Assembly: GCA_002269645.1 (NCBI GenBank)
Contig: NIVC01000460.1
Location: 496,001-560,000 of the forward strand
From: Macrostomum lignano
Taxonomy: Eukaryota
DNA: 64,000 bases
Direction of reading: 5' to 3'
Shown here: one piece after another, positions 19,763-64,000 of the stretch
Numbering within the stretch: the first letter of the stretch is position 1
Layout of the letters: every line of letters begins with the position of its first letter
Position numbers and translations under genes: made by a program
The notes under the pieces: generated by a model
The model's input: only the letters and a program-made list of their open reading frames with translations
What the model was told of the DNA's origin: nothing
Databases searched by the model: none

Positions 19763-19809
<47 letters not shown>

Positions 19810-43535: not shown

Positions 43536-43537
43536 AG

Positions 43538-44041: not shown

Positions 44042-45411
<1,370 letters not shown>

Positions 45412-45509
45412 CTAAGTGGCAATATGCCTGTCTGAGCCACTCTGCCCTTTAACCCTAGCTATCAGGCCTGTATTTAAAGCGAGTCGCGTGCCCTCCCCCT
45501 GCCCGCCAG

Positions 45510-45806: not shown

Positions 45807-45860
45807 GTGCGTTTGTTATTCGATTGTTTGCCGTGATTAGTGTTGGTAACAGCTATAATG

Positions 45861-46200
45861 AGTGTCAGTAGCGGCCATAGACAAAAGAGTCGGTAGCGGC
45901 CATAGAGAAAGTGTCAGTAGCGGCCATAGACAAAAGAGTCGGTAGCGGCCATAGACAAAAGTGTCAGTAGCGGCCATAGACAAAAGTGTCAGTAGCGGCC
46001 ATAGACAAAAGTGTCAGTAGCGGCCATAGACAAAAGTGTCAGTAGCGGCCATAGACAAAAGTGTCAGTAGCGGCCATAGACAAAAGTGTCAGTAGCGGCC
46101 ATAGACAAAAGTGTCAGTAGCGGCCATAGACAAAAGTGTCAGTAGCGGCCATAGACAAAGTGTCAGTAGCGGCCATAGACAAAAGTGTCAGTAGCGGCCA
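45861..46200. repeat. 25-bp intronic minisatellite (GTGTCAGTAGCGGCCATAGACAAAA)
   Basis: About 13 units. Confidence 0.96.
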
Positions 46201-46278
46201 ATTATCGAACCAAAGAGTCCTGAGAGGCTCCGCATCATCCACTCTAAGAGCCACCCCCTCCGTCCCGCCGCCCTGCAG

Positions 46279-46431
46279 GTGCAGCAGCTCCAAGACGATC
46301 TGGAGCGGGCCAATCGAGGCCGAGTGGACACCGATCAATTGGAGAAGCAGCGGGAGGCGGCCAGGCAGCTCAGCGATCACAAATACAAGCTGGCCACTGC
46401 GCAGCAGCAGATCACAGCTCTGCAGGCCGAT
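46279..46431 (+). CDS. LRRFIP2: LRRFIP exon 5
   Basis: QREAARQLSDHKYKLATAQQQITALQAD matches LRRFIP QREANRQISDLKFKL.KAEQ.IT.LE. Confidence 0.9.
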
Positions 46432-46599
46432 GTGAGCACATTTAGCAGGGCCTCACGTCTGACTTTCATTTATTTTCACTGTTGCTAAGTTTTACTGGCG
46501 TTATTAAATGTTGTTTTAAACATGTTTAGCTACCAACGTAGAATATTTGCTCTCACTACATCGATATAGATGGCGAAATCATATTAATCATATTAGATG

Positions 46600-47260
46600 G
46601 AGATTAGAACAAGATAAAGGTGCGATCAAAGTAGATAAAGGTGAGATTAGATTAGATAAGAGGTTAGATTAGGTTTGATGAGAGATGAGATATCGCGGTA
46701 GATAAAGATGAGATCAAGGTAGATAGATAGAAGTGAGATCAATGTAAATACAGGTGAGATCAAGGTAGATAGAGATCAGATCAAGGTAGATAGAGGTGAG
46801 ATCAAGGTAGATAGAGGTGAGATCAAGGTAGATAGAGGTGAGATCAAGGTAGATAGATAGGAGTGAAATCAATTTAGATACATAGAGGTGAGATCAAGGT
46901 AGATAGAGATGAGATCAAGGTAGATAGATAGAGGTGAGATCAAGGCAGATAGATAGAGGTGAGATCAAGGTAGATAGATAGAGGTGAGATCAAGGCAGAT
47001 AGAGGTGAGATCAAAGTAGATAGATAGAGATGAGATCAAGGAGGTAGATGGATAGAGATGAGATCAAGGTAGATAGATAGAGGTGAGATCAAGGGAGATA
47101 GATGAGATCAAGGTAGATAGATAGAGGTGAGATCGAGGTAGATAGATGAGATCAAGGAAGATAGATAGAGATGAGATCAAGGAAGATAGATAGAGGTGAG
47201 ATCAAGGTAGATAGATGTGAGATCAAGGCAGATAGAGGTGAAATCCAAGGCTAGAGTGAG
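46600..47260. repeat. Degenerate 21-25-bp intronic minisatellite (GAGATCAAGGTAGATAGAGGT)
   Basis: Read directly from the sequence. Confidence 0.9.
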
Positions 47261-47970
47261 ATCCACAAATTAGATCAAGAATGGAGACAGACTGAATCGA
47301 AGTAGTTAGATTAGATTAATTAAATGAGTGATTAGATTCATTTAGAGGTTAAAATCCAACTCTATATGTTCAACAATTAAATGTTGGGTCTGAAGAATTT
47401 GTCTAATTCATTTTGCTCTGTAAAGCTGACAGCCTAAATTAGCTTATCTCACTTTGCAGGCGACACTGCAGAAAGACAAGGTTTGAATAAAATGGAATAT
47501 TGTCCAAGTCTGTCCAGTTTTGTAAAGTGTTAGCCATCGGCAAGGCCTCCTTGATTGCCCAGGCATTCCGCTCTCTTCTCGTCTTGTCTCTACCCGCAAT
47601 GTCTGGGGTCTTGCTGTTTTCTCTGCTTTTAGCAAAAGAAGCAATGCCGTGTGCAGCGATGGGAGGGGGGTTGGTTTGGCCATCTGCGATGCATTTTGGC
47701 CAGATTTGTGAACCGATGAACTTTTTCGTGTATGCACGCGTTTCGCCTACTTGTCAGTGCTAGTAGTATTATGCGGGCAATGCTAGCAATATGCAGTTAG
47801 TAGTAGTTGGAATGCGAGTTGGTCTGTCATTTTTATCCTGCTAGATTGCTGATTTTTAACCAGAGATTGATGATCGCTTGCTTGTGTTTGTACGTTTCCT
47901 GGCGGGTCTGAATTTATCTCAGAAGTCCTCAAGGAACTCCCCATGGAATGCCAAGTCCTAAGTAATTTAA

Positions 47971-48363
47971 GGGTATAACAAGTCCTAATAGAATTCCCAG
48001 GGTATAACAAGTCCTAATAGAATTCCCAGGGTATAACAAGTCCTAATAGAATTCCCAGGGTATAACAAGTCCTAATAGAATTCCCAGGGTATTCTAAGTC
48101 CTAAGAGTATACCAAGTTCTAATGAAATTCCATAGGGTATTCCTCAGGGCATACCAAGTTCTAATGGAATTCCCCAAGGGTAATCCAATTCCTAAGGGAA
48201 TTCCCCAGGGCATACCAAGTCCTAATGGAATTCCCCAAGGGTATTCCAATTCCTAAGGGAATTCCCCAGGGCATACCAAGTCCTAATGGAATTCCCCAAG
48301 GGTATTCCAATTCCTAAGGGAATTCCCCATGGCATACCAAGTCCTAATGGAATTCCCCAGGGT
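47971..48363. repeat. 29-bp array changing into a 61-bp dimer of alternating 31- and 30-bp units
   Basis: GGGCATACCAAGTCCTAATGGAATTCCCCAA alternates with GGGTATTCCAATTCCTAAGGGAATTCCCCA. Confidence 0.9.
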
Positions 48364-48456
48364 ATTTTTCCCAAGCGATTCCTCTGGCGCTTGCTTCTGA
48401 GCTGCTGGTTACCTTAGCCAACCTAGCCAAGCCAGTCTATTGCTAAACCGCTTCAG

Positions 48457-48684
48457 GTGATCCGGCTGGAAGGTCAGGTGAAGCGGCTCACGAAGAAGGC
48501 AGAGGAGGCTGACGAAGAGTGCGGCCAGGCCAAGGCGGAGGCGCGCAACCAGAAGCGGCTGGCCAGGGAGCTCGCCAGCGAGGTGGAGGATTTGAAATCT
48601 CAGAACAACAGCCTGCGCCGGAATCTGGAGCGACTGCGGGCGCCGGGCGGCGGCAAAAGTTCTGGCGGCGGCGACGCCTCTTAG
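48457..48684 (+). CDS. LRRFIP2: LRRFIP exon 6 (last)
   Basis: VIRLEGQVKRLTKKAEEADEECGQAKAEARNQKR...NNSLRRNLERLR matches the LRRFIP C-terminus RLEGQV.RYK..AE.AEK.EDELKAEKRKL...N.HL.KRLEK. Ends in TAG. Confidence 0.9.
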   Translation: MIRLEGQVKRLTKKAEEADEECGQAKAEARNQKRLARELASEVEDLKSQNNSLRRNLERLRAPGGGKSSGGGDAS

Positions 48685-49139
48685 GGTTCGAGTCTGAGCA
48701 CTGCTCATGCTTTGAGAGTCCACTGCCTTAGCCCCAACCCCTGTCTGTTGATCGGCTCACTTCACTTTCACTGATATATATAAAAGTTGTTTTTTAAAAA
48801 CAATGAAAATTGAAGCAATGTAAGCTTTATATTATAATATTCGGTTTCGTATGAAGGCTTACTAAGTCAAGTTAATGAAGGCCTTAGTTTAAGTTGTAAA
48901 AAGTGCCTGTTTATTGCTGCGCTGTGTCTGCGAGAGATCAGATATTAGCCTGACTCTACATGTATGCTATATTTTATTACAGGTTTGATGCGCACTATGC
49001 AGCCTGCCATTTATAGAATATACCCGGGAGTCTGTATTGATGTAGTCCTAGCTCGTATACTCAGCTGAGGTTAGGGCTCAGTTGTTGAACCCCCTATGCA
49101 TGTAGTGATGACCTGCATAGCTGGTTAGATCTTCCCCTA

Positions 49140-49470
49140 TCGCCCTCTTCCCCTCTCGCCGTCTCCCCTCGCCTTCCCCCCTCGCCTTCTCCCCCTCTCG
49201 CCGTCTCCCCTCGCCTTCCCCCCTCGCCCTCTTCCCCTCTCGCTGTCTCCCCTCGCCTTCTCTCTCTCGCCCTATTCCGCTCGCTGTCTCCCTTCTCGCC
49301 CTCCCCCTCTCGCCCTCTTCTCCTCTCGCCGTCTCCCCTCGCCTTCTCCCCCTCTCGCCTTCTCCCCCTCTCGCCGTCTCCCCTCTCGCTTTCTTCCCCT
49401 CTCGCCCTCTTGCCCTCTCGCCCTCTTCCCCTCTCGCCCTCTTCCCTCTAGCCTTCTTCCCCTCTCTTCA
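49140..49470. repeat. Pyrimidine-rich degenerate repeat (TCGCC...CCCTC)
   Basis: Read directly from the sequence. Confidence 0.85.
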
Positions 49471-49837
49471 TATCATTTCCCTCCGAGCCCATTAAAACCA
49501 GCATTCACCTACTATGACTAATTCAGTATAATTGCATATTACTAATTGTCAATTGCTATCTACAGAACTGCTTTCACAACAAATTTGGTCTGCCTGCTAT
49601 TATTTATCAAATTACGTACCAGTGTCACTCTGATCCGATATGTATCTTGCTTTCTACGAGTATTTAATCTGGTGCGGCTGCCGCCCTGCCGTTATGATGC
49701 TAAGCAGATTAAATTAATCTGTCTTCCTCTCACCGAGTTTTGTTCGCATCGATTTATTGCTTTCAGTGGAGTCTGTTGGTAGAAATATTATATGAGTTTT
49801 GTCTGTTAAAATCATAATTTGACTAAATTCTTTGGGA

Positions 49838-51597
49838 TCTGACAATTAGCTCCTATGGGATCTGACAATTAGCTCCTGTGTGATCTGACAATTAGCCCCT
49901 ATGGGATCTGACAATTAGCCCCTATGGGATCTGACAATTAGCCCCTATGGGATCTGACAATTAGCCCCTATGGGATCTGACAATTAGCCCCTATGGAATC
50001 TGACAATTAGCCCCTATGGGATCTGACAATTAGCCCCTATGGGATCTGACAATTAGCCCCTATGGGATCTGACAATTAGCTCCTATGGGATCTAACAATT
50101 AGCTCCTATGGGATCTGACAATTAGCTCCTATGGGATCTAACAATTAGCTCCTATGGGATCTGACAATTAGCTCCTATGGGATCTGACAATTAGCCCCTA
50201 TGGGATCTGACAATTAGCTCCTATGGTATCTGACAATTAGCCCCTATGGGATCTGACAATTAGCTCCTATGGTATCTGACAATTAGCTCCTATGGGATCT
50301 GAAAATTAGCTCCTATGGGATCTGACAATTAGCTCCTATGGGATCTGACAATTAGCCCCTATGGGATCTGACAATTAGCTCCTATGGGATCTAACAATTA
50401 GCTCCTATGGGATCTGACAATTAGCTCCTATGGGATCTAACAATTAGCTCCTATGGGATCTGACAATTAGCTCCTATGGGATCTGACAATTAGCCCCTAT
50501 GGGATCTGACAATTAGCTCCTATGGGATCTAACAATTAGCCCCTATGGGATCTGACAATTAGCCCCTATGGGATCTGACAATTAGCCCCTATGGGATCTG
50601 ACAATTAGCTCCTATGGGATCTGACAATTAGCTCCTATGGGATCTGACAATTAGCCCCTATGGGATCTGACAATTAGCTCCTATGGGATCTGACAATTAG
50701 CCCCTATGGGATCTGACAATCAGCCCCTATGGGATCTGACAATTAGCTCCTATGGGATCTGACAATTAGCTCCTATGGGATCTGACAATTAGCCCCTATG
50801 GGATCTGACAATTAGCCCCTATGGGATCTGACAATTAGCTCCTATGGTATCTGACAATTAGCTCCTATGGGATCTGAAAATTAGCCCCTATGGGATCTGA
50901 CAATTAGCCCCTATGGGATCTGACAATTAGCCCCTATGGGATCTGACAATTAGCTCCTATGGGATATGAAAATTAGCTCCTATGGGATCTGACAATTAGC
51001 TCCTATGGGATCTGACAATTAGCTCCTATGGGATCTGACAATTAGCCCCTATGGGATCTAACAATTAGCCCCTATGGGATCTGACAATTAGCTCCTATGG
51101 TATCTAACAATTAGCTCCTATGGGATCTGACAATTAGCTCCTATGGGATCTGACAATTAGCCCCTATGGGATCTGACAATTAGCCCCTATGGGATCTGAC
51201 AATTAGCCCCTATGGGATCTGACAATTAGCTCCTATGGGATCTGAAAATTAGCTCCTATGGGATCTGACAATTAGCTCCTATGGGATCTGACAATTAGCT
51301 CCAATGGGATCTGACAATTAGCTCCTATGGTATCTAACAATTAGCTCCTATGGGATCTGACAATTAGCTCCTATGGGATCTGACAATTAGCTCCTATGGG
51401 ATCTGACAATTAGCTCCTATGGGATCTGACAATTAGCCCCTATGGGATCTGACAATTAGCTCCTATGGTATCTGACAATTAGCTCCTATGGGATCTGACA
51501 ATTAGCTCCTATGTGATCTGACAATTAGCCCCTATGGGATCTGACAATTAGCCCCTATGGGATCTGACAATTAGCCCCTATGGGATCTGACAATTAG
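49838..51597. repeat. 23-bp minisatellite (TGACAATTAGCYCCTATGGGATC)
   Basis: About 76 units. Confidence 0.98.
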
Positions 51598-52342
51598 TTT
51601 CGGTGCTTCATTTTTATTATAAAGTACATTGAACCGTGCTCACTGTTCGCCAGCCTTCAGCATAGAGTGACCACGCGATTGGGTTCACTTTGTCTGTACA
51701 TCAAATAATTGCTACAGCTTTTTAACAAAATTCAATCAAGTTCACTCGCACTTAGCTTTGAAAATTGGAGTTAGTTGTGTACTTAGTATGCTAAATATAA
51801 TTTCGTGATATATCTAGGCTGATGCACCAGTTCAGACTTCATAGCCTGTAAAGTTTAACGAAATTTATGATTGATTCATTTGTGTCACTTGCCCTGTCAC
51901 GATTGCAACAACCCCTGTTGTCCCTGTCCGCGTACGTGTGTTTAAATATATTATTCTATCTATATGAATATTGTTTTTGATTAACGATTAAAACTGCAAT
52001 TTTAAATTCAGCAGCACGTGCTGTGTGTTTGTAGCTGAGCTAATTATGGCTAATTATAATTGCAATTTCTTTATCTATTATGCCCAGTGGTGAGGTCTCA
52101 TCACAATGGCATACATGTAACAGTGTCTGCACCGGTTCGCTCGTACTTACCAGTTAACTGTCTCACCTATGCTAGTCAAAAAGCATTGAGAATTGGCACA
52201 TGGCGTCTGTGGCTTCAAAGTCTGGGAGTCTACGAATGGTTTTGAGTTTCGCGAATATCCCGCAGCTGTACCCTAACCTGTTTCTGAACCTATTTTCCCT
52301 GCCTGCTACCCTTTCTACCTACTTCTCTCCCTACCTATACTC

Positions 52343-54593
52343 TTCGATGCAGAACTGGAGACTGCAGGACGTCAAGTCCAACTTCAAGGCCAACCAAGTG
52401 CGTCTTAAAAGTTTGCACTAGTTGTTAAATAGCAGTATTTATTATTTAATTTCATTTTTATTCCTTTGTCATTATAAAAATTTCCCTACCGCTGCTCTAC
52501 GATAAATCTTCCCTCTCAATCATGCACAGCGTCACAGGTGGGCTAGCCGTGTCAACGCGAACTCGATATGTTCCAGACACTGCTCGGACAGAGGAGCAGT
52601 ACAGCATCAATATCCATGTCCAGGACACATCCTCTTCGGAATTCCAAGCAGCAGTGCAGTGTAGGCTGAAGCACACAAGTCAGGGTTCTCTGCTCTTGTT
52701 GCGTCATGGAGTGGGTTCAACGACCAAGTTCGTCGCTACGTAAAGGCCAACACCTGAATTTTCAGACCTCTTTACCTCATGGAGCGGATTCCAGGACGAA
52801 GTCCGCCGGTACGTAGAGCAGTACACATCGAGATTCTGTGGCATATTCACCTCATGGAGCGGCTTCGATGCTCAAGTGCGGCAGTATGTACTAAGCCATG
52901 AAGGAGAATTCGCTACACTTCTTGGAGTGAGCTCTAAAGCTCCAGACACTTCATCGTCGGAATTCCGTGCTTTAGTTCTTAAATACATCGAAGAAAACAA
53001 AACAGCGAGACTTCACTTAATATCTTTGCAAGTTGGAACACTTGGCGATCACACGCGTCTCTATTTGAAGGCCCATACCTCCGAGTTTTTCGACATTTAC
53101 CTCGTGGAGTGGCTTTGAATCACAAGTTCGAATATATATCCAAACGTATAAAGAGCAATTCAGCGACTTAAAACTCTCCAAAACAGAGGAGATTGACACA
53201 TCTCCAGAATTCCGCGCCTTGGTGCTGAGGTACTCCCAAGAGCACAAGCCAGAGTTCTCAGCCATGTTCATCACATGGAGCGAGTTTGGCGACCAAGTGC
53301 ACCGCTACGTGAAAGAGCACACGTCGGAGTTCTCCAACATCTTTGTCTCGTAGAGCGGATTCCGCAGCCAAGTGCGTAGCTACGTGCAGGAGAACACTTC
53401 GGAGTTCTCTGACATCTATCTCAACTGGGAGGGTTTCGAGCCGCAAGTGCGTGAATATGTGCAGAAACAGGAAAGCAAGTTTGTCGAGCTTCTCCCCGTC
53501 AAGACTAAAGAGATTGACACTTCGTCGCCAGAGTTCCGCGCCATGGTGCTGAGATACGTTGAGGAGCACGAATCGGAGTTTGCCTCTATCTTCGCCACGT
53601 GGAACATTTTCAGCGACTACTTGCAGCGCTACGTTAAAGAGAACACGTGGGAGTTCACAGAAATCTTCTCCTGGAGCGGAGTCGAAAGTCAGATTAGAAA
53701 TTATTTGCGTAAGAACTCAGAGAAATTCTCCGCCCAGCTCACTGTGCAGGCGAAGGAGATCGACACGTCGTCGCCAGAAGTCCAAGCAAACAAGTCAGAA
53801 TTTACTGCCATGTTCGTTACCTGGAACGAGTTCGAGGATCAAGTGCGCCGCTACGTCGAAGAGCACACACATCGGAGTTCTCTAGCATCTTTGTGTCGTG
53901 GAGTGGATTCGAAACTCAAGTTCGGCAGTATATTCGAACACACGAATACAAGTTTAGTGAGCTGAAACAGCCTGATTCCTCGTCACCGGAGTTTCGCTCA
54001 ATGGTTTTAAAGTACGTTCGAGAACACTTTTCAGAGTTTCTATGACCTTTACATCTTGAAGCCTTTGAAGCTGAAATTCGGCGTTATGTTTTTCAGCACG
54101 ATACAGAGTTTAGTTTATTGCGTTGCTTGGCTGCATTCGTGAAAAGGATAAACAGACTTTGCAACTGATTTCCTCCAGTGGCTGTTGTAATGAGATTTCA
54201 TGGACAATTTCTGAATCTGGTTTTCACTATGAACGAAACGATGAATCTTTATCTGTGATCCATTCAGGCAAATCAGCCGTTGGAATGACGGCCTTTGAGC
54301 CACCAAATGCAGCTGACGAAAGACTTGAAAGGAATTTGTCTGACTTAAGCACAGGATTCTCGTTCGTTCATAGACCTACGCTCGTACAACATCTGGCGAC
54401 ATCAAAACAACTGAATCAAGAGAGTACATGTCGTTCGGATCTCGAACAGAGTCGGTTCCCGTCGGTTTTCAGGGCATTGTATCGGGAGCTACTGGGTCAC
54501 GCGCCGGTTACATCGGACGGAGAGATGCTAGACTTATCCGGATCGAGAACTCAACAGTTTTATAACTCATCTATTAGTATAGCATTTGAATAG
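52343..54593 (+). pseudogene. Partial diverged duplicate of the 3' half of the downstream plakin gene
   Basis: Homology to 60766 onward starts abruptly mid-exon. A 30-bp deletion at 52489/52490 removes the splice acceptor. TGG>TAG at 53351-53353, plus several frameshifts. Confidence 0.8.
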
Positions 54594-55763
54594 GATATGA
54601 AGCTCAAAAAAAAGTAAAATATTTTAGCATAACTTACAGAAACCAACTACCAAAAAAGCAGTTTAATTGAAGTGCATACTTTGCTGTTGGGATTTTTTCA
54701 GCGACTATTTATCCACAGTTTTTTTTATTTTCGCACTGTTTAGAAAATCGATTTTAACCCTGGTTATTAAGTTTTTACGCTCTTAAGTTTTACTTTGAAC
54801 CAAATCTTTATATATAGTGTGTAGTTGTCTTTAGTTTTAACAAATTTAACTAACGTAGAATTATAATTAAAACTTATCACTACTAGCTCTTATTTATTGT
54901 TTTTTTAAAGATTTTTCTGAATAACAAAGTTACCCATAATTACACATTTTGCTGAGTAGAAAGAATTTCAATTAGCTGCGAATTCTTTTACGTAACAATA
55001 AATTAACCATTTCTCTTTCGCCAAAAAACTTTTTTACATATTTTTTAAATTAAATATATACCAACTAAAGTGCGAAATATTTAACACTCATTAAAACACG
55101 ATAACTAGTACCCAATTTCTTGTTAATCTTTATTTATTACGTCAACGGAAGCGATGTTCTGTAAGGCGTAAGAGGCACACTGAACAAGTGCGCCATAAGC
55201 TTAATTCTCTTGATACTCGGGTGTCCACGGAGAAACCTAGTTGTTTTCCAATTACGAGCGTAAATGAAAAAAAGAGAATTAGAAGAAAACGAAGGTATGG
55301 AAAATAAGATTGGAGCAGAGGGGGTGTAAAGATGAATTCAACTCAGCGAGCAGAGCTTTGCAAAGCAGTTGCGATTCATATGGAGCTCAAGCGGCCAAGC
55401 CAAGGAGTGATGGCGAAAGGCTGCGGCTAAAGATGGAATTCTTGCAAACTTTGGAAAACTGTCCACCTTGCTTCCTTTTATGAGGCAAAAAGTGCCTTAT
55501 TATTCAAAGCCAGCCGTAAAAGGCGTAAACGTTTTTACCCCGCGAGAGGGGTCAGAGTGAGCCTGCCAGGGGGGGGGGCAAGAAGAGATGCAGACAGCCC
55601 TGAGTCCGTGGGTCGTTCGGTGCGCTTCAAGTAAGTTGGGCGGCAGACTGTCTGGCCTGCTTTAGAAATGCAGTTCTTCCCACTGTGCCACTCTGCTCTG
55701 GTGTGTTGTTTTACGTCTGCGCCTCCATTCTGCTCTGTCTGTGCTTCTCCGCCATCTATCAAT

Positions 55764-55792
55764 CTATCTATCTAGCTATCTATCTATCTATA

Positions 55793-55823
<31 letters not shown>

Positions 55824-55888
55824 TTATCATCTATCATCTATCTATCTATCTATCTATTTATCATCTATCATCTATCTATCTATTTATC

Positions 55889-55942
<54 letters not shown>

Positions 55943-55973
55943 TTATCATCTATCATCTATCTATCTATTTATC

Positions 55974-56023
<50 letters not shown>

Positions 56024-56066
56024 TTATCATCTATCTATCTATCTATCTATCTATTTATCATCTATC

Positions 56067-56112
<46 letters not shown>

Positions 56113-56117
56113 TTATC

Positions 56118-56179
<62 letters not shown>

Positions 56180-56375
56180 TTATCATCTATCTATCTATCT
56201 ATCTATCTATCTATTTATCATCTATCATCTATCTATCTATCTATTTATCATCTATCTATCTATCTATCTATCTATTTATCATCTATCTATCTATCTATCT
56301 ATCTATTTATCATCTATCATCTATCTATCTATCTATTTATCATCTATCATCTATCTATCTATCTATCTATCTATC
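55764..56375. repeat. (TCTA)n / GATA-type microsatellite with TTTATCA variants
   Basis: Read directly from the sequence. Confidence 0.98.
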
Positions 56376-56937
56376 CCCTATTATCTGTCCACATTAATTA
56401 TTTATTTCTTTCTATTCTCTCGTGCAGAGCCATCTTTCCATTTCTATCTCACTTGGTTTTGTTGCATTTTTTTCACTCAATGCTGGCTTGAAAAGCTGTA
56501 AGAGTTTTTGCTGCATCTACTCGCTGTTCAAGCGTCGTCAATAGGCTTACTTTGGACTCGGGAGGAGCAGTTGAGAAGCTCCACCGCCACTGGACAGTTG
56601 CTGAATGAATGCTAAAGGAACAATAGCCAGGCAAAAAAGAGATTCGGTGGGTCTTTCAATGCCTTTCAATGTTGGGGTTATTAAAGCGGGCAGCCATCTC
56701 CAGTATGCGCCTTCTCTGCGGCCCACAGAACCCAGCACTGTTTTTCTCGAAAGACAGCCCCAGTTCTGACTAAAAATTAGCAAAGCTTTTCAGCGCATCA
56801 AACCTGCAATTGCTTAACTCTCCTTGTATTTCAGAAATCTTAACTACCCTTTTTCCGAACGGAAGAATCGAGATTTAGTGAGTGATTTATTTTTTTTCGA
56901 ATCGCTGGAAATTCGATATAGTACTGTATGTTGCTAT

Positions 56938-57170
56938 ATGGGACTGGAGTGGGATTCTGTAGGGACTGAAGTGGGATTCTGTAGGGACTGAAGTGGGATT
57001 CTGTAGGGACTGGAGTGGGATTCTGTAGGGACTGAAGTGGGATTCTGTAGGGACTGAAGTGGGATTCTGTAGGGACTGGAGTGGGATTCTGTAGGGACGA
57101 GTGGGATTCTGTAGGGACTGGAGTGAGATTCTGTAGGGACGAGTGGGATTCTGTAGGGACTGGAGTGAGA
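56938..57170. repeat. 20-22-bp minisatellite (GTGGGATTCTGTAGGGACTGRA)
   Basis: About 10 units. Confidence 0.93.
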
Positions 57171-57272
57171 CAATTAAACATCTTTATCATTTGCTTTTGC
57201 ATGGACCTTGTTGGCATTTTTCGGTTATGGTGAAAAAATTTTTCGTGAACTTCACCAAATACTCGCTGACAG

Positions 57273-57665
57273 GTGACCCTTGATCGCCTCTCAATGACGG
57301 CTGTGGCGACGGCGCATCAGCAGGAGATTGATCAGTGGCTGCATGACAACCGAAATGACGTGGAGTCAGCTGCCATCGGCTGCACTCACCAGGCGCTGCT
57401 GTTTCAGCAAACCAAGCAGTCGGTCCTGCTGGAGGAGATCCAAGCGCTTGAGAGCAGGCTGGACGAGTCCAACAAGTCAGCGGCAGCGTCCCTCACCAAG
57501 CTGAAGGCAATGGAGAGTCAGATTGGCGTGAACCAGGAGGCGCTGACTTACCTCCAGCAGGTGACGTCGCTTGAGACGGCAGTTATGTCAGCCGGTCAGC
57601 AAGTGATGGAGAAGGCACTGCAGATGTCCAAAGTGACCGATGGAGTCGTCCTGAAAGCCAAGAAG
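57273..57665 (+). CDS. Plakin-family protein, first exon found; model join(57273..57665,58149..58373,58458..58604,58993..59147,59311..59419,60017..60165,60327..60516,60721..60820,60928..>64000) with two 1-nt frameshifts
   Basis: CTGACAG| acceptor and AAG|GTGAGA donor. Helical, spectrin-like translation. In-frame ATG at 57294. Upstream exons not identified. Confidence 0.75.
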
Positions 57666-58148
57666 GTGAGAAAAGAACTCAACCTTATTGAAAATCTGTG
57701 CGAATACAGTTGACCAAAAAAATCTACATACGAGCCTCGTATGTCAATTACTAAGCTGCAAGGGAGTAAGCTAATAAGATTGGGGTGAATTTATGAGTAT
57801 GCCATGTGTATGAAGGTCCGGTGTTACGATGGGCGGCAACCTTGCATGTGATCTGGGTGTATGAGTTTATCAAACTCAGGCGTCGACAAAATCTACATCC
57901 AGAGACAGATGAGAGAGGAAATTGAGAAGAGAGAACAGTTGAGAGAGTAGAGAGGAGAGAGAAGATTAGATGAGAGGTAGGATCAGAAAGTCTAGAAAAC
58001 AATTTAATGTCCTATTTCAATCCAAAATCTTGACGGCTCTCTAGGAGCTACTGGTAGAACAAGACAGCTGATGAAGCAAGAAACGGGTAAAGCCATATTA
58101 TACGCTACTCGTAGTTAGAAAATCGAATTGGCGAATATTTTCTCCCAG

Positions 58149-58373
58149 GAGTTGTCGGCCGAGGTCCACGGCACCTGGAGCTGGGTGAGCCAGCTGGCCG
58201 ACCTGAACCGGCTCCACACCCGCAACGCCGCGGACTACCAGACCTTCCACCACAGCGCCTACGAGCTCAACGCCATGCTGAACAGCCGAGCCAGCAGCAG
58301 CAGCTCCGCCATTGCCGCCATTCCCGCCAACAAGATGCTGGGCTCCATCAAGCGCATAAACACCGTGCTCACT
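58149..58373 (+). CDS. Plakin exon (spectrin-repeat region)
   Basis: WSWVSQLADLNRLHTRNAADYQTFHHSAYEL resembles the plakin motif W.W...L......HL..A..Y.QFF.EA. Phase 0/0. Confidence 0.85.
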
Positions 58374-58457
58374 GTGAGTAACCTCTTGTCAGTTTCAATA
58401 TCGGAAATACTCAAATCGCACACTTCAAAAGTAAAAGCCTCCTCGAAACCTCGGCAG

Positions 58458-58604
58458 GACAACTTGGCCCAGTTCAACCGGCTGTGGCAGCTGTCAGTCG
58501 ACCTGACGCAGCGCAGCCGAGCTGTGGTGCCGCTGCACCTGCGTTTCAGCACTGACGCCATCCCGTTCGCGGGCAAGAACGTGTTCAAGTTCGATGACGG
58601 CGAG
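58458..58604 (+). CDS. Plakin exon (lead-in to SH3)
   Basis: L.QRSRAVVPLHLR resembles plakin L..RS..IV.L..R. Donor GAG|GTAAGT. Confidence 0.85.
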
Positions 58605-58992
58605 GTAAGTGCCAACTGTATTGCAGAGTGAATTGCATATTTGATGGCGCTCGTCCTATCATATTCGGACACCTGCGAGTGGAAGTTGTGCCTGAAAACC
58701 TCTGCACACTACTGACTGAGTAGTGCGGAGAGAAAATGAAATGAAAATAAAAAACGGCAAAGCAATTAGCATACCAACAATAAAAATGATGGGTGTCTAC
58801 ACGTACTCCTAGAATGCGGGACTGGTCCTGGGCTATCGCAAGGTTGTTTTACTTCTTCCTAGCCTTCCGTTACTTTTTCTCCTAATTGGAAACCAAGCCC
58901 TTTTGAGTGGCGCATTTGCCAGTATTTCAAATATTTTCACAAAAAAATTCTGCTGTCTTCCGTACGATCGTATGGCCTCTCAATCCCCACAG

Positions 58993-59147
58993 ACGGTCCT
59001 GGAGCCGGGAGAGCAGGTGACTGTCATCGACAACTCCCAGTCCTACACGTGGACGGTGAGGCGCTCGGACGGAAGCGAGGTCGAAGTGCCCAGCACCTGC
59101 ATCTGGCTGCCGCCGGCCGATCCGCAGGCAGTGCAGCTCGCTATCGG
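58993..59147 (+). CDS. Plakin exon (SH3 insertion)
   Basis: GEQVTVIDNSQSYTWTVRRSDGSEVEVPSTCIWLPPADPQAV is the plakin SH3 signature (G....L.DNS....W.V....G....VPS.C...PP.D.EA). Confidence 0.92.
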
Positions 59148-59310
59148 GTTTGTGGGAATATTATTATAAAAATACTTCTTTATTGCTCACTCCTTGTCTT
59201 GAGCGCATGAAGTCTTAAAAGTGCTTTGATAATTAAAAAAAGATTAGGCATTTAGAAAAGCAGTCGTTTTGTATTTAAGAACTGAAAAGCGAACTCGTTG
59301 CGGTTTTTAG

Positions 59311-59419
59311 GCTGAGAAGAAAGCTGCTGAACACCTGGTCTCAGGTTCTGAACAGTCTGCGACAGTGGATCGCCGAGTTCTTTGATTCCTACTTGACCCA
59401 GATGCTCAAGAGCCCTGTG
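59311..59419 (+). CDS. Plakin exon
   Basis: TTTTAG|G completes a phase-2 codon. LRRKLLNTWSQVLNSLRQWIAEFF. Donor GTG|GTGAGT. Confidence 0.8.
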
Positions 59420-60016
59420 GTGAGTGCTTTTTGATCATTCGAGTGAAAAATTTCTGATCATAATAACCATACCGTTTATCATTGAAATCGTATAGTATTC
59501 TTTTTTTACACCTAAAAACAAAAGCCAGCTTTAGCGTGTAGTTAATATATAGGACAGCAGTTTGCGTCGTTTGCAAAGTGCTTTCGGAGCGGAGATACTG
59601 AACGATCTCTGTTCGCTTTTTCTTTTATTGCAATCGAAACTCGCGACGAAATCGACTGCTTTGGGTGCGGTGGGCACTCTTCAGTTCTCAAAAAGCCAGG
59701 CGCAACAGTCAAGCTGTATCGGTGCACGCCTTAAAACAAAATTGTGCTATTCCTTGAACATTTAATCGTGCAGACAGATTCTTTATTGCATTTTGGTATT
59801 TCTTTTTATATAACACCAAATATGAAAAGTGATACATAGAATGGCTTTATTTCAAGTTGAAACATTAGTTTTTAGCTACTTTTATAATAGCATCCAAGGA
59901 TTCTCCACCTCAGCTTATACATACGCCACTTGCATATAAATATACTTATGTATAGACATGCTTTTTATAGTACTCGTAAAAGTACAATTTTCAAATCTAC
60001 CCATTGCCGTCTACAG

Positions 60017-60165
60017 GGGGTAGCCAAAAAAAATCAAGGACGCTGTGACTGAATTTCTTAATTCGCTGCGTCAGTCGAGCCAAACATTCCTGGGCGTTGA
60101 CGATCAGTTTACGGATCGCATTGTCAAATCCATCGATAAAGTGCTTGAAAAGATGACAATCTGCG
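60017..60165 (+). CDS. Plakin exon; needs a one-base shorter A run at 60026-60033
   Basis: CTACAG| acceptor and TGCG|GTGAGA donor. The frame is restored if A8 is read as A7. Confidence 0.6.
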
Positions 60166-60326
60166 GTGAGAATCTGATTCAAAAATACCTTATTAATACC
60201 AGAATACTTTTCTGTAAACCAACTAATTCGATGCAAGTTTTAGTGAAGAAATGTAACCGTAAATGCAGAAGTAAAGTACTTTGATGCTTATTAATGTCCA
60301 ATGAACGAATTTTTTGTTTACTTTAG

Positions 60327-60516
60327 AAGGTCCAACGGCATCCCTAGTGGACAGAGAACTAATAATTCTACAGGCCTGCCTAGCCAAGCTACAGGAGCAC
60401 CTGAACGAATGGCGTCATTGCTCAAATGAAGCTACAGAAGCTGAGACCGAGCTGCAAGGCCGGACCGCTTTATCGAAGGAGTCTTCTGAAGTTCTGGTGC
60501 GCATCGAACTGCTTTC
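60327..60516 (+). CDS. Plakin exon
   Basis: TTTAG|AA (phase 1) and TTTC|GTAAGT (phase 2); helical translation. Confidence 0.8.
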
Positions 60517-60720
60517 GTAAGTCGGACGGACCATTTTGATTTGCTGGAATTTATCTTGTTAGGCGTGGCGTGCGTTCTGACACCTCCCACCTCTGAAGGC
60601 CACTTGTGGTCGGCGTGAGGTGCAAATTTTTGTTGTTCTTGTTAGACTTTTGTAATCACACGTGATTAAAATACATGTAGTCTAAAGGGACTGCACTTTA
60701 ATTTCTCTTTTCACAAGCAG

Positions 60721-60820
60721 ACAGCTGCAAGAAGAGTCCCAGTCTAAGTTTGAGGAGCTACAGCGTTCGATGCAGAACTGGAGACTGCAGGACGTCAAGT
60801 CCAACTTCACGGCCAACCAA
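60721..60820 (+). CDS. Plakin exon
   Basis: AAGCAG|A (phase 2) and CAA|GTGCGT (phase 0). QLQEESQSKFEELQRSMQNWRLQDVKSNFTANQ. Confidence 0.8.
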
Positions 60821-60927
60821 GTGCGTCATAAAAGTTTGCACTAGTTGTTAAATGGCAGCATTTATTATTTAATTTCTCTTTTTAATTAGTCATTATAAAA
60901 ATTTCCCTACTCCTGTAAACATCGCAG

Positions 60928-63900
60928 AGAGCACCGCAACCGCTGTTCTACGATATATCTTCGCTCTCAATCATGCACAGCGTCACAGGAAGACCTGCCG
61001 TGTCAACGCGAACTCTTAATGTTCCAGACACATCTGAGACAGACGAGCAATACAATAAAAGATCAGAAGAAAAAGTTACTGCTGAACTAACGGTGAAAAA
61101 ATACAATATTGACACTTCGTCTTCGGAATTCCGTGCACTGGTACAGAAGTACGTCGAAGAGAACAAGTCGGATTTCGCAGCGATCTTTCGCACCTGGAGT
61201 GAGTTCAAGGAGCAAGTGCGTCTGTACGTCGAGGAGCACACGTCAGAGTTCTTGAACGTTTTCACCAAGTGGAGTGGCTTCGATGATTATGTTCGAAAAT
61301 ATGTGCAGCAGAACCAAGAAAAGTTCATCACAGTGCCTGCCGTCAAGACTAAGGAGATAGACACTTCATCTTCGGAATTCCGTGCACTGGTGCAGAAATA
61401 CGTCGAAAAGAACAAGACCGAGTTTATCGCCTTATTCGTTACCTGGAGTGAGTTCGAAGAACAAGTGCGTCGCTACGTCGAAGAGAACACATCGAAGTTC
61501 TCTAGCATCTTTTTTTCGTGGAGCGGATTCGAAAGAAAAGTCAAGCAGTACGTGGTGAAGAATGAAGAGAAGTTTGCTACGCTTCTTCCCGTCAAGACCA
61601 AAGAGATAGACACTTCGTCTTCGGAATTCCGTGCACTGGTACAGAAGTACGTCGAAGAGAACAAGTCGGATTTCGCAGCGATCTTTAGCACCTGGAGTGA
61701 GTTCAAAGAGCAAGTGCGTCTGTACGTCGAGGAGCACACGTCAGAGTTCTCGAACGTTTTCACCAAGTGGAGTGGCTTCGATGATTACGTTCGAAAATAT
61801 GTGCAGCAGAACAAGAAAAGTTCATCACAGTGCCTGCCGTCAAGACCAAAGAGATAGACACTTCGTCTTCGGAATTCCGTGCACTGGTACAGAAGTACGT
61901 CGAAGAGCACAAGACCGAGTTTACCGCCATGTTTGTTACTTGGAGTGAGTTCGAGGAGCAAGTGCGTCGCTACGTCGAAGAGAACACATCGAAGTTCTCT
62001 AGCATCTTCTTTTCGTGGAGTGGATTCGAAAGCAAAGTCAAGCAATACGTGGTGAAGAATGAAGACAAGTTTGCTACGCTTCTTCCCGTCAAGACCAAAG
62101 AGATAGACACTTCGTCTTCGGAATTCCTTGCACTGGTACAGAAGTACGTCGAAGAGAACAAGTCGGATTTCGCAGCGATCTTTAGCACCTGGAGTGAGTT
62201 CAAAGAGCAAGTGCGTCTGTACGTCGAGGAGCACACGTCAGAGTTCTCGAACGTTTTCACCAAGTGGAGTGGCTTCGATGATTACGTTCGAAAATATGTG
62301 CAGCAGAACGAAGAAAAGTTCATCACTGTGCCTGCCGTCAAGACTAAGGAAATAGACACTTCGTCTTCGGAATTCCGTGCACTGGTGCAGAAGTACGTCG
62401 AAGAGAACAAGTCGGATTTCGCAGCGATCTTTAGCACCTGGAGTGAGTTCAAAGAGCAAGTGCGTCTGTACGTCGAGGAGCACACGTCAGAGTTCTCGAA
62501 CGTTTTCACCAAGTGGAGTGGCTTCGATGATTACGTTCGAAAATATGTGCAGCAGAACCAAGAAAAGTTCATCACAGTGCCTGCCGTCAAGACCAAAGAG
62601 ATAGACACTTCGTCTTCGGAATTCCGTGCACTGGTACAGAAGTACGTCGAAGAGCACAAGACCGAGTTTACCGCCATGTTCGTTACTTGGAGTGAGTTCG
62701 AAGAACAAGTGCGACGCTACGTCGAAGAGAACACATCGAAGTTCTCTAGCATATTTTTTTCGTGGAGTGGATTCGATGAAAAAGTGCGTTGGTATGTCGA
62801 AAGCCATGTGTCTAAGTTTAGTGATATCTTCGTTAATTGGACCGGTTTTGAAGCAAAAGTTCAACAGTACGTGATGCAAAATGAAGAAAAGTTTAAAATA
62901 TTGTTTGATGTTAAAAGCACTGAGCCTGATCTTTCATCACCAGAATATCGGGAATTGGTTTTAAAGTACATTCAAGAAAACATGTCCGAGCTTTTTATCA
63001 TTTTTACAACCTGGAGTGGTTTTACGGCTCAAATCCGTCGCTATGTTCAGCAGCACGAAGACGATTTTATTAAGCTGCTAGGCTGCGTTCGCGAATCAAA
63101 AAGTTCAATCCACACAGGCGAATCGCTTAAAATATCGGATACAGTGAAGACGACCGAAAGCAGCGAGTACAAGTCGTTCGGATCTCGAACGGAGACGGCT
63201 CCTGTCGGTGTTCAGGGCATTGTATCGGAAGCTACTGGGTCACGCGCCGTTAACATCGGCGGATCGGACGGAGAGATGCTAGACTTATCCGGATCGAGAA
63301 CTAGCCGATATTCCGCCTTCCCAGGAGAGTCGTATGGAACGTCGGATACAGTGAAGACGACCGAAAGCAGCGAGTACAAGTCGTTCGGATCTCGAACGGA
63401 GACGGCTCCTGTCGGTGTTCAGGGCATTGTATCGGAAGCTACTGGGTCACGCGCCGTTAACATCGGCGGATCGGACGGAGAGATGCTAGACTTATCCGGA
63501 TCGAGAACTAGCCGATATTCAGCCTTCCCAGGAGAGTCGTATGGAACGTCGGATACAGTGAAGACGACCGAAAGCAGCGAGTACAAGTCGTTCGGATCTC
63601 GAACGGAGACGGCTCCTGTCGGTGTTCAGGGCATTGTATCGGGAGCTACTGGATCACGCGCCGTTAACATCGGCGGATCGGACGGAGAGATGCTAGACTT
63701 ATCCGGATCGAGAACTAGCCGATATTCAGCCTTCCCAGGAGAGTCATATGAAACGTCGGATACAGTGAAGACGACCGAAAGCTACGAGTACAAGTCGTTC
63801 GGATCTCGAACGGAGACGGCTCCTGTCGGTGTTCAGGGCATTGTATCGGAAGCTACTGGGTCACGCGCCGTTAACATCGGCGGATCGGACGGAGAGATGC

Positions 63901-64000
63901 TAGACTTATCCGGATCGAGAACTAGCCGATATTCAGCCTTCCCAGGAGAGTCGTATGGAATATCGGATACAGTGAAGACGACCGAAAGCAGCGAGTACAA
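60928..64000 (+). CDS. Giant terminal exon of the plakin gene encoding two tandem-repeat regions; open to the window end after a 1-nt deletion at about 61812
   Basis: ATCGCAG|AGA acceptor is in phase 0 with ORF 60973. Manual translation from 61815 through the repeats shows no stop before 64000. Confidence 0.8.
61108..63080 (+). repeat. Coding 249-bp (83-aa) higher-order repeat made of 25-aa subunits, order A-B-A-B-A-A-B plus a degenerate unit
   Basis: IDT codons start at 61108, 61357, 61606, 61854, 62103, 62352 and 62601. Confidence 0.95.
63135..64000 (+). repeat. Coding 207-bp (69-aa) Ser/Gly/Thr-rich tandem repeat, four full units plus a partial fifth
   Basis: SDTVKTT units start at 63135, 63342, 63549, 63756 and 63963. 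Confidence 0.95.

What the first reader, a model, noticed from the sequence alone, without database searches (positions are those of the whole stretch)
57273..64000. Plakin N-terminus fused to unrecognised repeat domains instead of a rod and plectin repeats
Established: plakins follow the spectrin/SH3 plakin domain with a coiled-coil rod plus plectin repeats, or with further spectrin repeats plus EF-hand/GAR. Seen here: a short plakin region of about 490 aa, with no calponin-homology exon found, joined in phase to a single exon of over 1000 codons made of two repeat types matching neither pattern. Inferred: a lineage-specific cytolinker with a new cargo-binding arm, possibly for a specialised junction or filament system. 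The pseudogenic copy upstream shows the locus is evolving quickly.
Basis: partly seen in the sequence, partly recalled or inferred. Interest (0 to 1): 0.8.

Follow-up and report, generated by a model that had tools for sequence, protein, structure and literature searches.

The report
Flatworm plakin with novel repeat tail
This is a real, expressed Macrostomum lignano gene that joins a plakin-type N-terminal domain to two repeat arrays found only in this species, in place of the usual plakin rod and filament-binding modules; what it does is still unknown.

Summary
The window is Macrostomum lignano DNA. Nine GT-AG exons with consistent phases (57273-64000, + strand) encode about 480 aa of plakin domain. 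Pfam SH3_10 scores E=3.7e-10, and desmoplakin and plectin plakin-domain structures score about 1e-8. This domain is joined at 60820|60928 to one large exon holding 24 helical 25-aa sub-repeats (type A) and 69-aa S/G/T-rich units (type B), each with three GSR motifs. The junction is backed by independent gene models. It is also backed by a published tail proteome: one transcript ORF (RNA1310_1399.1_2) carries an envoplakin annotation and two tryptic peptides that match the window's B units exactly. Neither repeat type matches plectin repeats, spectrin, EF-hand, GAR or any PDB sequence, and a search of 1.84 billion representative proteins found relatives only in M. lignano. No calponin-homology exon is present, and translation probably starts at the ATG at 57294. 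One correction: the large exon is not open as assembled. A 1-bp deletion at 61813 breaks the frame, and an A8 run breaks exon 6 at the conserved acceptor; both are probably assembly or allelic indels. The upstream partial copy is a true pseudogene. This is a lineage-specific plakin variant, and a cytolinker role is inferred, not shown.

The parts
57273..57665 (+). Exon 1. It has an acceptor at 57271-57272, an in-frame TGA at 57267-57269 just upstream, and a probable start codon ATG at 57294 (MTAVATAHQQ...). It encodes the first helical (spectrin-like) part of the plakin domain.
   Evidence: The RNA-based paralogue models P0005 and P0009 start at the equivalent Met. Pfam Spectrin gives only a weak hit, E=0.011.
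58149..58373 (+). Exon 2 (plakin domain, region equivalent to SR4). The codon at 58332-58334 is AAG (Lys) where every other copy has Gly.
58458..58604 (+). Exon 3, following an 84-nt in-frame intron (58374-58457).
   Evidence: P0001 and P0014 skip the same 84 nt.
58993..59147 (+). Exon 4, encoding the plakin-type SH3 domain.
   Evidence: Pfam SH3_10 (PF17902), E=3.7e-10. Aligns to the SH3 of desmoplakin and plectin.
59311..59419 (+). Exon 5. It contains the breakpoint after which identity to the paralogue P0009 drops from 97-100% to 55-69%.
60024..60165 (+). Exon 6 as it reads in frame in this assembly. The acceptor used by all other copies is at 60015-60016 (exon starting at 60017, giving GVAKK). 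With the A8 run at 60026-60033 that conserved acceptor gives a frameshift; other copies imply A7.
60327..60516 (+). Exon 7 (helical, distal plakin domain).
60721..60820 (+). Exon 8, the last plakin-region exon, with its donor at 60821.
   Evidence: The upstream partial copy begins inside the homologue of this exon.
60928..61110 (+). Start of the large exon 9: a 61-aa non-repeat linker (RAPQPLFYDISSLSIMHSVTG...).
   Evidence: Low pLDDT and no secondary structure in the AF2 model.
61111..63086 (+). Type A array: 24 sub-repeats of 25 aa with the pattern W-S-[EG]-F-x3-V-x2-Y-V-x2-[NH]-x3-F-x2-[IL]-F-x2. An 8-aa spacer follows every third sub-repeat. Predicted to be helix-kink-helix.
   Evidence: dN/dS between units is 0.06-0.25.
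61812..61813 (+). Site of the 1-bp deletion that breaks the frame of exon 9 in this assembly. The resulting stop is TAG at 61855-61857.
   Evidence: P0014 reads QQNQEKF here with no shift.
63087..63134 (+). A 16-aa linker between the A and B arrays.
63135..64000 (+). Type B array: 69-aa units, 4.2 copies inside the window, and at least 12 in P0014. Each unit is S/G/T-rich, acidic, and holds 3 GSR motifs. The array runs off the window end.
   Evidence: The MS peptides TETAPVGVQGIVSEATGSR and AVNIGGSDGEMLDLSGSR match exactly.
52343..54560 (+). Partial pseudogenic copy of a paralogue. It runs from mid exon 8, through the intron and degenerate A units, to one B unit. It carries a TAG in place of a Trp codon at 53351-53353 and several frameshifts.

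Best explanation
This is a genuine, transcribed and translated M. lignano gene for a large cytoplasmic protein: at least 2,000 aa, acidic, with no signal peptide-like N-terminus.

Its N-terminal ~480 aa form a plakin domain, that is, spectrin-like helical repeats with the family-specific SH3 insertion. It starts directly at that domain, with no actin-binding CH domains. In place of a coiled-coil or spectrin rod and plectin-repeat or GAR modules, it carries about 650 aa of short two-helix repeats (24 x 25 aa). These probably form an elongated helical array. They are followed by at least 12 copies of a 69-aa S/T/G-rich unit that carries GSR motifs and is probably flexible.

Shown here: the architecture, the exon junction, coding constraint on the repeats, expression at RNA and protein level in tail tissue, and restriction to M. 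lignano.

Inferred: by analogy with other plakins, the plakin head docks the protein onto a membrane-associated junction or adhesion complex, and the repeat tail acts as a long multivalent arm, possibly tunable by phosphorylation, that engages a lineage-specific partner.

The two frame-breaking 1-bp indels in this window are most likely assembly errors or differences between alleles or homeologues, not loss of the gene.
For: Plakin head:
- Pfam SH3_10, E=3.7e-10.
- phmmer against desmoplakin 3r6n (1.9e-8) and plectin 3pe0 (3.4e-8), spanning SR4-SH3-SR5. A profile search gives the same result.
- The best Foldseek hits of the (low-confidence) model are 3r6n (E=9.5e-5, prob 0.99, 388 columns) and 3pe0.
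- The secondary structure is long helices, then three strands, then long helices.

Gene model:
- All junctions are GT-AG and phase-consistent.
- The same junctions appear in P0001, P0013, P0014 and in the paralogues.
- The BOX15 paralogue models are derived from transcripts (PMC5730564).

Expression:
- Dataset S3 of PMC6410801 (mass spectrometry of amputated tails) lists ORF RNA1310_1399.1_2: 1621 aa, pI 5.49, envoplakin e=9e-08. Two of its peptides are identical to window B units.
- My model has pI 5.16.

Coding constraint:
- dN/dS between A units is 0.06-0.25, including pairs on either side of the frameshift.
- 738 codons stay open after the shift.

Novel tail:
- Pfam shows no Plectin, Spectrin, EF-hand or GAS2 hit at E<=1.
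- No PDB sequence hit.
- Only M. lignano proteins turn up among 5.8e9 and 1.84e9 sequences.

Indels probably not real loss:
- P0014, a gene model of the same locus, lacks both indels.
- Several M. lignano database gene models (P0012, P0013, P0015) contain out-of-frame translated stretches, showing that frame errors are common in the underlying assemblies.
Against: - No functional data exist: no cell type, partner or phenotype.
- Both AF2 models are low confidence (pLDDT 52.7 and 45.2), so the shapes of the tail and the head are not established.
- The B units are net acidic. This differs from the GSR regions of spectraplakins, which I recall as basic, so the GSR analogy may be superficial.
- The window copy carries two frame-disrupting indels and a unique Gly-to-Lys change, so this particular copy could be non-functional.
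- The true C-terminus lies outside the window and is unknown.
- The proteome peptides cannot tell this locus apart from near-identical homeologous copies.
Confidence: 0.6

Rival explanations
1. The copy in this window is a recently disabled duplicate (homeologue) of a functional gene located elsewhere in the neopolyploid M. lignano genome. On this reading the 1-bp deletion at 61813 and the extra A at 60026-60033 are real, and the locus is on its way to becoming a pseudogene like the fragment upstream.
For: - Two independent frame-disrupting indels lie in one gene.
- A Lys is found where all other copies have Gly.
- A decayed partial copy sits 3 kb upstream.
- M. lignano is a neopolyploid with many redundant copies (abstracts of PMC10733133 and PMC10468722).
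Against: - There is not a single stop in the 738 codons after the shift.
- A units on both sides of the shift show dN/dS of 0.06-0.14 against each other.
- Apart from the indels, a short divergent stretch in the fourth B unit and one residue, the protein is identical to P0014.
- The assembly is PacBio-based, and both indels are single bases of the kind assemblers miscount, one of them in an A8 run.
- An alternative AG at 60022-60023 keeps exon 6 in frame.
Confidence: 0.2
2. The tail is not really new. The B array is an amplified version of the glycine-serine-arginine (GSR) tail found at the C-terminus of desmoplakin, plectin and spectraplakins. The A array is a divergent member of a known short helical repeat class (LRV/HEAT-like). 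The protein would then be an ordinary plakin with rearranged known modules.
For: - Each 69-aa B unit holds 3 GSR motifs, where composition alone predicts about 0.1 (p=6e-5 by shuffling). GSR regions are listed among plakin modules (PMC5979291).
- The A sub-repeats hit one bacterial LRV-repeat protein (P0007): whole-library E=8.2e-5, Pfam LRV E=2.8e-59 for that protein, and hhalign probability 95%, score 37.8 against at most 10.1 in 60 column shuffles.
Against: - Pfam LRV, HEAT and Plectin do not hit the window protein at E<=1.
- P0007 was the best of 1.84e9 sequences and is itself repetitive, so the statistics are inflated.
- The periods differ (25 vs 26 aa).
- The B units are acidic (net -14 over 288 aa) and 69 aa long, not simple GSR runs.
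- No alignment to any real plakin tail could be made here.
Confidence: 0.1
3. The plakin exons and the repeat exon belong to two different genes, for example two cistrons of a trans-spliced precursor, and the in-phase junction is a coincidence or a gene-prediction artefact.
For: [quoted passage not shown]
- P0014 shows that predictors do over-merge at this locus.
Against: - One transcript ORF carries both the envoplakin similarity and the B peptides.
- The same junction is found in three paralogue lineages, including transcript-based models.
- The pseudocopy preserves exon 8, the intron and exon 9 as one unit.
- Exon 9 has no start-codon context of its own: its frame is open from the acceptor.
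Confidence: 0.03

Closest known systems
Periplakin, envoplakin and desmoplakin (plakins without an actin-binding domain)
   Same: They begin with a plakin domain that contains the SH3 insertion and have no CH domains. Desmoplakin is among the best sequence and fold matches. The published transcript annotation names envoplakin as the best human hit.
   Different: These proteins continue with a heptad coiled-coil rod and a linker and/or plectin-repeat domains (PMC5979291). Here only 61 aa separate the plakin domain from the A array, and no plectin repeat is detectable. The plakin domain here is also shorter: about 480 aa against roughly 900 aa (from memory) in vertebrates.
Plectin, BPAG1/dystonin and MACF1, with their invertebrate spectraplakin counterparts (Shot, VAB-10)
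   Same: The plakin domain is homologous (plectin 3pe0, E=3.4e-8). GSR tripeptides occur in the tail, as they do in spectraplakin C-termini.
   Different: No CH domains, spectrin-repeat rod, EF-hands or GAR domain are present. The B units are acidic 69-aa repeats, not a short GSR stretch.
M. lignano paralogues BOX15_Mlig021572g1 (PAA82667.1, P0009) and BOX15_Mlig010347g1 (PAA76993.1, P0005), both annotated as hypothetical proteins
   Same: They share the same start (MTAVATAHQQ). The first 314 aa are 96-100% identical to this gene. They have the same exon 8/exon 9 junction and one type A unit.
   Different: The distal plakin region is only 55-69% identical. Their tail has a single A unit followed by a third, Cys-containing repeat of about 49 aa (SGCF...CDW...SGCYYE) instead of the B array.
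Bacterial leucine-rich repeat variant (LRV, PF01816) helical repeats
   Same: Both are short (25 vs 26 aa) two-helix repeats and share the V-R-x-Y-V-x-E-N-T-S core.
   Different: Pfam LRV does not detect the window protein. The hydrophobic second half differs (F-x2-[IL]-F-x2-W vs P-P-x-x-L-x-x-L-A). Homology has not been shown.

Membership tests
Plakin family | A plakin domain with an SH3 domain inserted in a spectrin repeat | tested here: met
   Pfam SH3_10, E=3.7e-10 with 40.2 bits against a cut-off of 22.8. The alignment to desmoplakin and plectin runs through the helices on both sides of the SH3.
Plakin family | A string of spectrin repeats (SR3-SR9) making up the rest of the plakin domain | tested here: inconclusive
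   Sequence similarity covers only the SR4-SH3-SR5 region. Pfam Spectrin gives E=0.011, below the cut-off. Foldseek aligns 388 columns to the four-repeat desmoplakin fragment with probability 0.99, but TM is only 0.12-0.16 because the model is poor (pLDDT 45). The long helices are consistent with about 4-5 repeats.
Plakin family | Plakin (plectin) repeat domains at the C-terminus | tested here: not met
   No PF00681 hit at E<=1 in exon 9. No PDB sequence hit for the A or B arrays. The true C-terminus beyond the window, and beyond P0014, has not been seen.
Plakin family | A central coiled-coil rod for dimerisation | tested here: not met
   [quoted passage not shown] The A array is predicted as short 8-13 residue helices with a 25-aa period, not long heptad helices. 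No dedicated coiled-coil predictor was run.
Plakin family (plectin, BPAG1, MACF1 type) | An N-terminal actin-binding domain made of two CH domains | tested here: not met
   No CH-like ORF was seen on reading the three + strand frames of 48700-57300 (no Pfam scan was run on that stretch), which hold satellites and the pseudocopy. There is an in-frame TGA at 57267-57269 and an ATG at 57294. The transcript-based paralogue models start at the same Met. A distant upstream exon cannot be strictly excluded.
Spectraplakins | A spectrin-repeat rod plus EF-hands and a GAR (GAS2) domain | tested here: not met
   None of these Pfam families appears at E<=1 in exon 9 or in P0005.
Plakin/spectraplakin GSR tail | A glycine-serine-arginine repeat region | tested here: inconclusive
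   There are 3 GSR motifs per 69-aa B unit and 12 in 288 aa, with p=6e-5 by composition shuffle. However, the region is net acidic, and no plakin tail sequence was available to align.
LRV / HEAT-like helical repeats | A match to the family profile (PF01816 or PF25591) | tested here: not met
   Neither family appears among the Pfam hits at E<=1. There is only a single-protein similarity, to P0007: E=8.2e-5, hhalign probability 95%.
DUF285 (PF03382) | A match above the Pfam gathering score | tested here: inconclusive
   The score is 28.9 bits against a cut-off of 25, and two DUF285 proteins appear at E of 4.5e-5 and 3.1e-4 with 21-23% identity. Both repeat types have a period near 25 with Trp and Phe at fixed spacing. 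The A array is predicted to be all-helical. I judge this a periodicity artefact.

The most novel reading that the evidence does not exclude
M. lignano has evolved a modular plakin family. One plakin-domain 'head' cassette, kept 97-100% identical between paralogues by recent gene conversion or recombination, is combined with interchangeable, fast-evolving repeat tails: A+B here, A+C in BOX15_Mlig021572g1. This would give a set of cytolinkers that share one docking site but differ in their cargo arms, serving flatworm-specific structures such as the intermediate-filament-rich anchor cells of the adhesive organs.
Probability: 0.2. Interest if true: 0.65.

Novelty: new variant of a known kind. Interest (0 to 1): 0.4.

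Why it matters
Plakins are usually described as a closed set of domain combinations: ABD, plakin domain, rod, plectin repeats, or spectrin/EF/GAR. A flatworm protein that keeps only the plakin head and replaces everything else with species-restricted repeats shows that the head can act as a portable docking module. It also offers a tractable case for asking what the plakin domain does on its own, since M. lignano has RNAi, transgenesis and tail proteomics. The practical value is more modest. The work corrects the annotation at this locus: the merged model, the start codon and two indels. It also flags an uncharacterised but fairly abundant tail protein for groups studying adhesion and the epidermis.

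Tried and rejected
- **Pfam hits above cut-off in exon 9 that I reject as repeat or periodicity artefacts:** VQ motif (43 bits, driven by FRALVQKY), PfUIS3, Mrr_cat 'restriction endonuclease' (the same spurious hit is printed in the published proteome table), IMCp, DUF3106 and DUF285.
- **Fold search with the A-array model:** nothing better than E=1.6, and the model is low confidence.
- **PDB sequence searches with an A profile and with the B array:** no meaningful hit.
- **The look-up of encoding contigs for P0001 and P0004:** not on record, so no second genomic locus could be read and the 3' end of the gene remains unseen.
- **Profile word-search with the plakin head:** only M. lignano proteins.
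- **Literature searches:** Macrostomum with plakin or desmoplakin, the BOX15 gene ids, and RNA1310_1399 found no paper discussing this gene.
- **Supplement searches in three other papers:** nothing found.
- **Reading the 84-nt segment 58374-58457 as coding** (it is in frame and has no stop): rejected, because all other models splice it out.
- **Minus-strand ORFs across the repeats** (up to 149 aa): by-products of the repeat, contradicted by the peptides and by dN/dS on the + strand.

Full report
**Origin and context.** The plakin-region translation is 98% identical over its full length to UniRef A0A1I8GR27 of Macrostomum lignano. Every relative found is from that species, so the window is M. 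lignano nuclear DNA. The window is packed with micro- and minisatellites. Other genes in it are:
- a retroelement integrase fragment (3-422);
- a Kelch-repeat gene (about 7201-8415);
- an ADP-ribosylglycohydrolase gene (18542-20995);
- an LRRFIP gene on the + strand (43532 to about 48681).

Between LRRFIP and the finding lie a 23-bp satellite (49833-51597), a partial gene copy (52343-54560), an (ATCT)n tract and a 22-bp minisatellite.

**Gene model.** Reading the sequence gives eight exons with canonical GT-AG borders. Their phases chain without conflict into 487 codons. A ninth exon begins at 60928 in phase 0. An 84-nt in-frame intron (58374-58457) is spliced out in all database models. Exon 1 is preceded by an acceptor and by an in-frame TGA (57267-57269). 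The first ATG is at 57294. Three paralogue models start at the equivalent Met: P0005, P0009 and P0011. P0005 and P0009 come from the Mlig_3_7 annotation, which is transcript-based (genome-guided transcriptome, TBONE, TransDecoder; PMC5730564). [quoted passage not shown] No CH-domain exon is present upstream.

**Plakin head.**
- Exon 4 is a plakin-type SH3: Pfam SH3_10, E=3.7e-10.
- Residues 133-329 align to the crystallised plakin domains of desmoplakin (3r6n, 1.9e-8) and plectin (3pe0, 3.4e-8), through the helices on both sides of the SH3. A profile of the paralogues gives 7.7e-9 for both.
- AlphaFold2 on P0001 with a five-sequence alignment was poor (pLDDT 45.2). Its secondary structure is still long helices, three short strands at the SH3, then long helices to about residue 486, followed by about 60 disordered residues.
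- Foldseek's only hits at E<=0.001 are the two chains of 3r6n (best E=9.5e-5, probability 0.99, 388 columns); plectin 3pe0 follows at E=2.9e-3. TM-scores are low.

The family-defining SH3-in-spectrin feature is therefore met. The number of spectrin repeats is not settled.

**The tail.** Exon 9 opens with a 61-aa linker.

*A array (61111-63086).* TRF reports periods of 249 and 498 bp. At protein level the array is 24 sub-repeats of 25 aa, with the pattern W-S-[EG]-F-x3-V-x2-Y-V-x2-[NH]-x3-F-x2-[IL]-F-x2. An 8-aa spacer (KTKEIDTS) follows every third sub-repeat. The hydrophobic spacing fits two short amphipathic helices per sub-repeat. AF2 predicts helix(13)-kink-helix(8-10) throughout, but with pLDDT 52.7.

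*B array (63135 to the window end).* After a 16-aa linker come 69-aa units, with 97% matches between copies and 4.2 copies in the window. The composition is 44% S+G+T and net acidic. Each unit holds three GSR tripeptides, which is more than composition predicts (p=6e-5).

*Searches.* Pfam finds no Plectin, Spectrin, EF-hand or GAS2 match at E<=1. PDB sequence searches are empty. A word-index search of 5.8e9 proteins and an exhaustive phmmer search of 1.84e9 representatives return only M. lignano proteins, plus three weak periodic matches. Two of these are DUF285 proteins and one is a bacterial LRV-repeat protein. The LRV similarity (VRRYVAENTS vs VRRYVEENTS) reaches hhalign probability 95%, with a score of 37.8 against at most 10.1 in 60 column shuffles. 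But that protein was the best of 1.84e9, the periods differ by one residue, and Pfam LRV does not detect the window protein. I keep it as a lead for the fold (a short two-helix solenoid), not as a family assignment.

**Is it a real protein?** Yes.
1. A units have diverged heavily at synonymous sites (dS up to about 1.8 between the two unit subtypes) but little at non-synonymous sites, with dN/dS of 0.06-0.25.
2. Dataset S3 of Wunderer et al. 2019 (PMC6410801; mass spectrometry of amputated tails) lists the ORF RNA1310_1399.1_2: 1621 aa, 182 kDa, pI 5.49. It is annotated 'Human: EVPL, envoplakin, e=9e-08' and 'Pfam: Restriction endonuclease PF04471'. That Pfam label is the same spurious Mrr_cat hit that the A array gives.
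3. The ORF has three peptides. TETAPVGVQGIVSEATGSR and AVNIGGSDGEMLDLSGSR are exact, adjacent tryptic peptides of the window's B unit. The third, AVNIGGSDGEILNLFGSR, is a variant unit not present in the window.

So one assembled transcript ORF contains the plakin similarity, the A array and the B array, and B is translated. The gene was not found in the stored parts of the footprint or lectin pull-down tables. Those files are truncated, so this absence carries little weight.

**Corrections to the observation.** Exon 9 is not open as assembled. At 61813 the window reads GTGCAGCAGAAC-AAGAAAAG, while the three other copies of this motif in the array read AAC(C/G)AAG. As assembled, the frame ends at a TAG at 61855-61857, while the shifted frame runs open for 738 codons to the window end. 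Second, all other copies splice exon 6 at the acceptor at 60015-60016 and read GVA(K/R)K. In the window an A8 run (60026-60033) breaks that frame. Only the alternative AG at 60022-60023 keeps it open.

P0014 is a 2314-aa database model of this same locus. It matches my model everywhere except at these two sites, one Lys/Gly codon (58332-58334) and a short frameshifted stretch in one B unit. It has neither indel and carries 12 B units without reaching a convincing C-terminus. Several M. lignano database gene models (P0012, P0013, P0015) contain out-of-frame translated stretches, and the Mlig_3_7 assembly is PacBio-based. I therefore rate assembly error or allelic difference as more likely (about 0.75) than true inactivation of this copy (about 0.2).

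**The upstream copy.** Positions 52343-54560 align to the stretch from mid exon 8 through the intron, the start of exon 9, degenerate A units and one B unit. Nucleotide identity is 80%, 65-70% and 87% respectively. The copy has a TAG where Trp is conserved (53351-53353) and at least five frame changes. Its sequence is closer to the paralogue lineage of P0002-P0004 (FKANQ, EEQYSIN) than to the gene downstream. It is a genuine pseudogene fragment. P0014 wrongly splices parts of it onto the real gene.

**A gene family.** M. lignano has at least three lineages with this head:
- the present gene (A x24 sub-repeats plus B x12 or more);
- the P0002-P0004 lineage (A units; the rest unknown);
- P0005, P0009 and P0011 (one A unit, then a third, Cys-containing repeat of about 49 aa).

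Residues 1-314 of the present gene are 97-100% identical to P0009. Residues 315-480 are only 55-69% identical, and the switch falls inside exon 5. That mosaic pattern indicates recent gene conversion or recombination of the 5' half.

**Mechanism.**

*Shown:* a cytoplasmic-type protein (the N-terminus MTAVATAHQQEIDQW is not signal-peptide-like; no predictor was run) of at least 2,000 aa, made of a plakin head and two novel repeat arrays, and present in tail tissue.

*Established for the family (PMC5979291):* plakin domains dock plakins onto junctional proteins such as integrin beta4/BP180 and plakoglobin/plakophilin. Rods dimerise the protein. PRDs bind intermediate filaments. GAR-GSR regions bind microtubules.

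*Inferred:* the head anchors this protein at a membrane-associated complex. With no rod, any dimerisation would need another route. The A array gives a long helical arm, and the B array gives a flexible, serine-rich, probably phosphorylatable multivalent region for a partner specific to this lineage.

The anchor cells of the adhesive organs are rich in intermediate filaments and lie in the tail (PMC4016567 abstract). They are an obvious candidate site, but nothing here tests that.

**Verdict.** The 'single open exon' claim needs correcting. The interpretation as a lineage-specific plakin variant is supported, while its function is conjecture. The gene already sits in databases as an unnamed 'SH3_10 domain-containing' or hypothetical protein, and in one proteomics table. 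I found no description of its architecture. I rate it a new variant of a known kind, of moderate interest (0.4).

Noticed in passing
window 57294-59350 versus 59350-60820 (compared with P0009, P0005 and P0011): The identity to the paralogues is mosaic. The first 314 aa are 97-100% identical to P0009, and the next 166 aa are only 55-69% identical. The switch falls inside exon 5. This suggests recent gene conversion or recombination of the 5' half of the gene.
   Followed up: partly
window 52343-57665 (database model P0014): A 2314-aa database gene model splices pieces of the upstream pseudogene fragment onto exon 1 of the real gene. This is an annotation artefact and should be split.
   Followed up: yes
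window 58332-58334: The codon is AAG (Lys) in the window, where P0001, P0005, P0009, P0011 and P0014 all have Gly. This needs two base changes from any Gly codon, so it is either an unusual allele or an error.
   Followed up: no
P0009 residues ~800-1080 (M. lignano BOX15_Mlig021572g1): A third, unrelated tail repeat of about 49 aa with conserved cysteines (SGCFKQITLEPASVTCDWRPKYDNSGCYYETSYQASSAKF...) follows the single A unit in this paralogue. Pfam, run on the close paralogue P0005, recognises only the SH3.
   Followed up: partly
window 49833-51597, 44042-45406, 55754-56375, 56940-57167 and many others: There is a very high density of tandem repeats: a 23-bp satellite of 77 copies, (GTCT)n of 1.4 kb inside the LRRFIP gene, (ATCT)n of 0.6 kb, a 22-bp minisatellite just upstream of exon 1, and more than 20 further arrays.
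   Followed up: no
window 43532-48681 (+): This is an LRRFIP-family coiled-coil gene (Pfam LRRFIP, E=1.9e-13) with satellite-filled introns. It lies immediately upstream of the plakin locus.
   Followed up: partly
window 3-422, 7201-8415 and 18542-20995 (+): Three other features are present: a retroelement integrase C-terminal fragment (Integrase_p58_C, E=2.2e-12), a Kelch-repeat gene in a single 405-codon ORF (E=6.9e-52), and an ADP-ribosylglycohydrolase gene in at least two exons (E=6.9e-30 and 4.5e-11).
   Followed up: partly
PMC6410801 Dataset S3, peptide AVNIGGSDGEILNLFGSR: This variant B-unit peptide (EILNLF instead of EMLDLS) is absent from the window and from P0014. It implies further divergent B units downstream, or an expressed paralogue or homeologue.
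   Followed up: no
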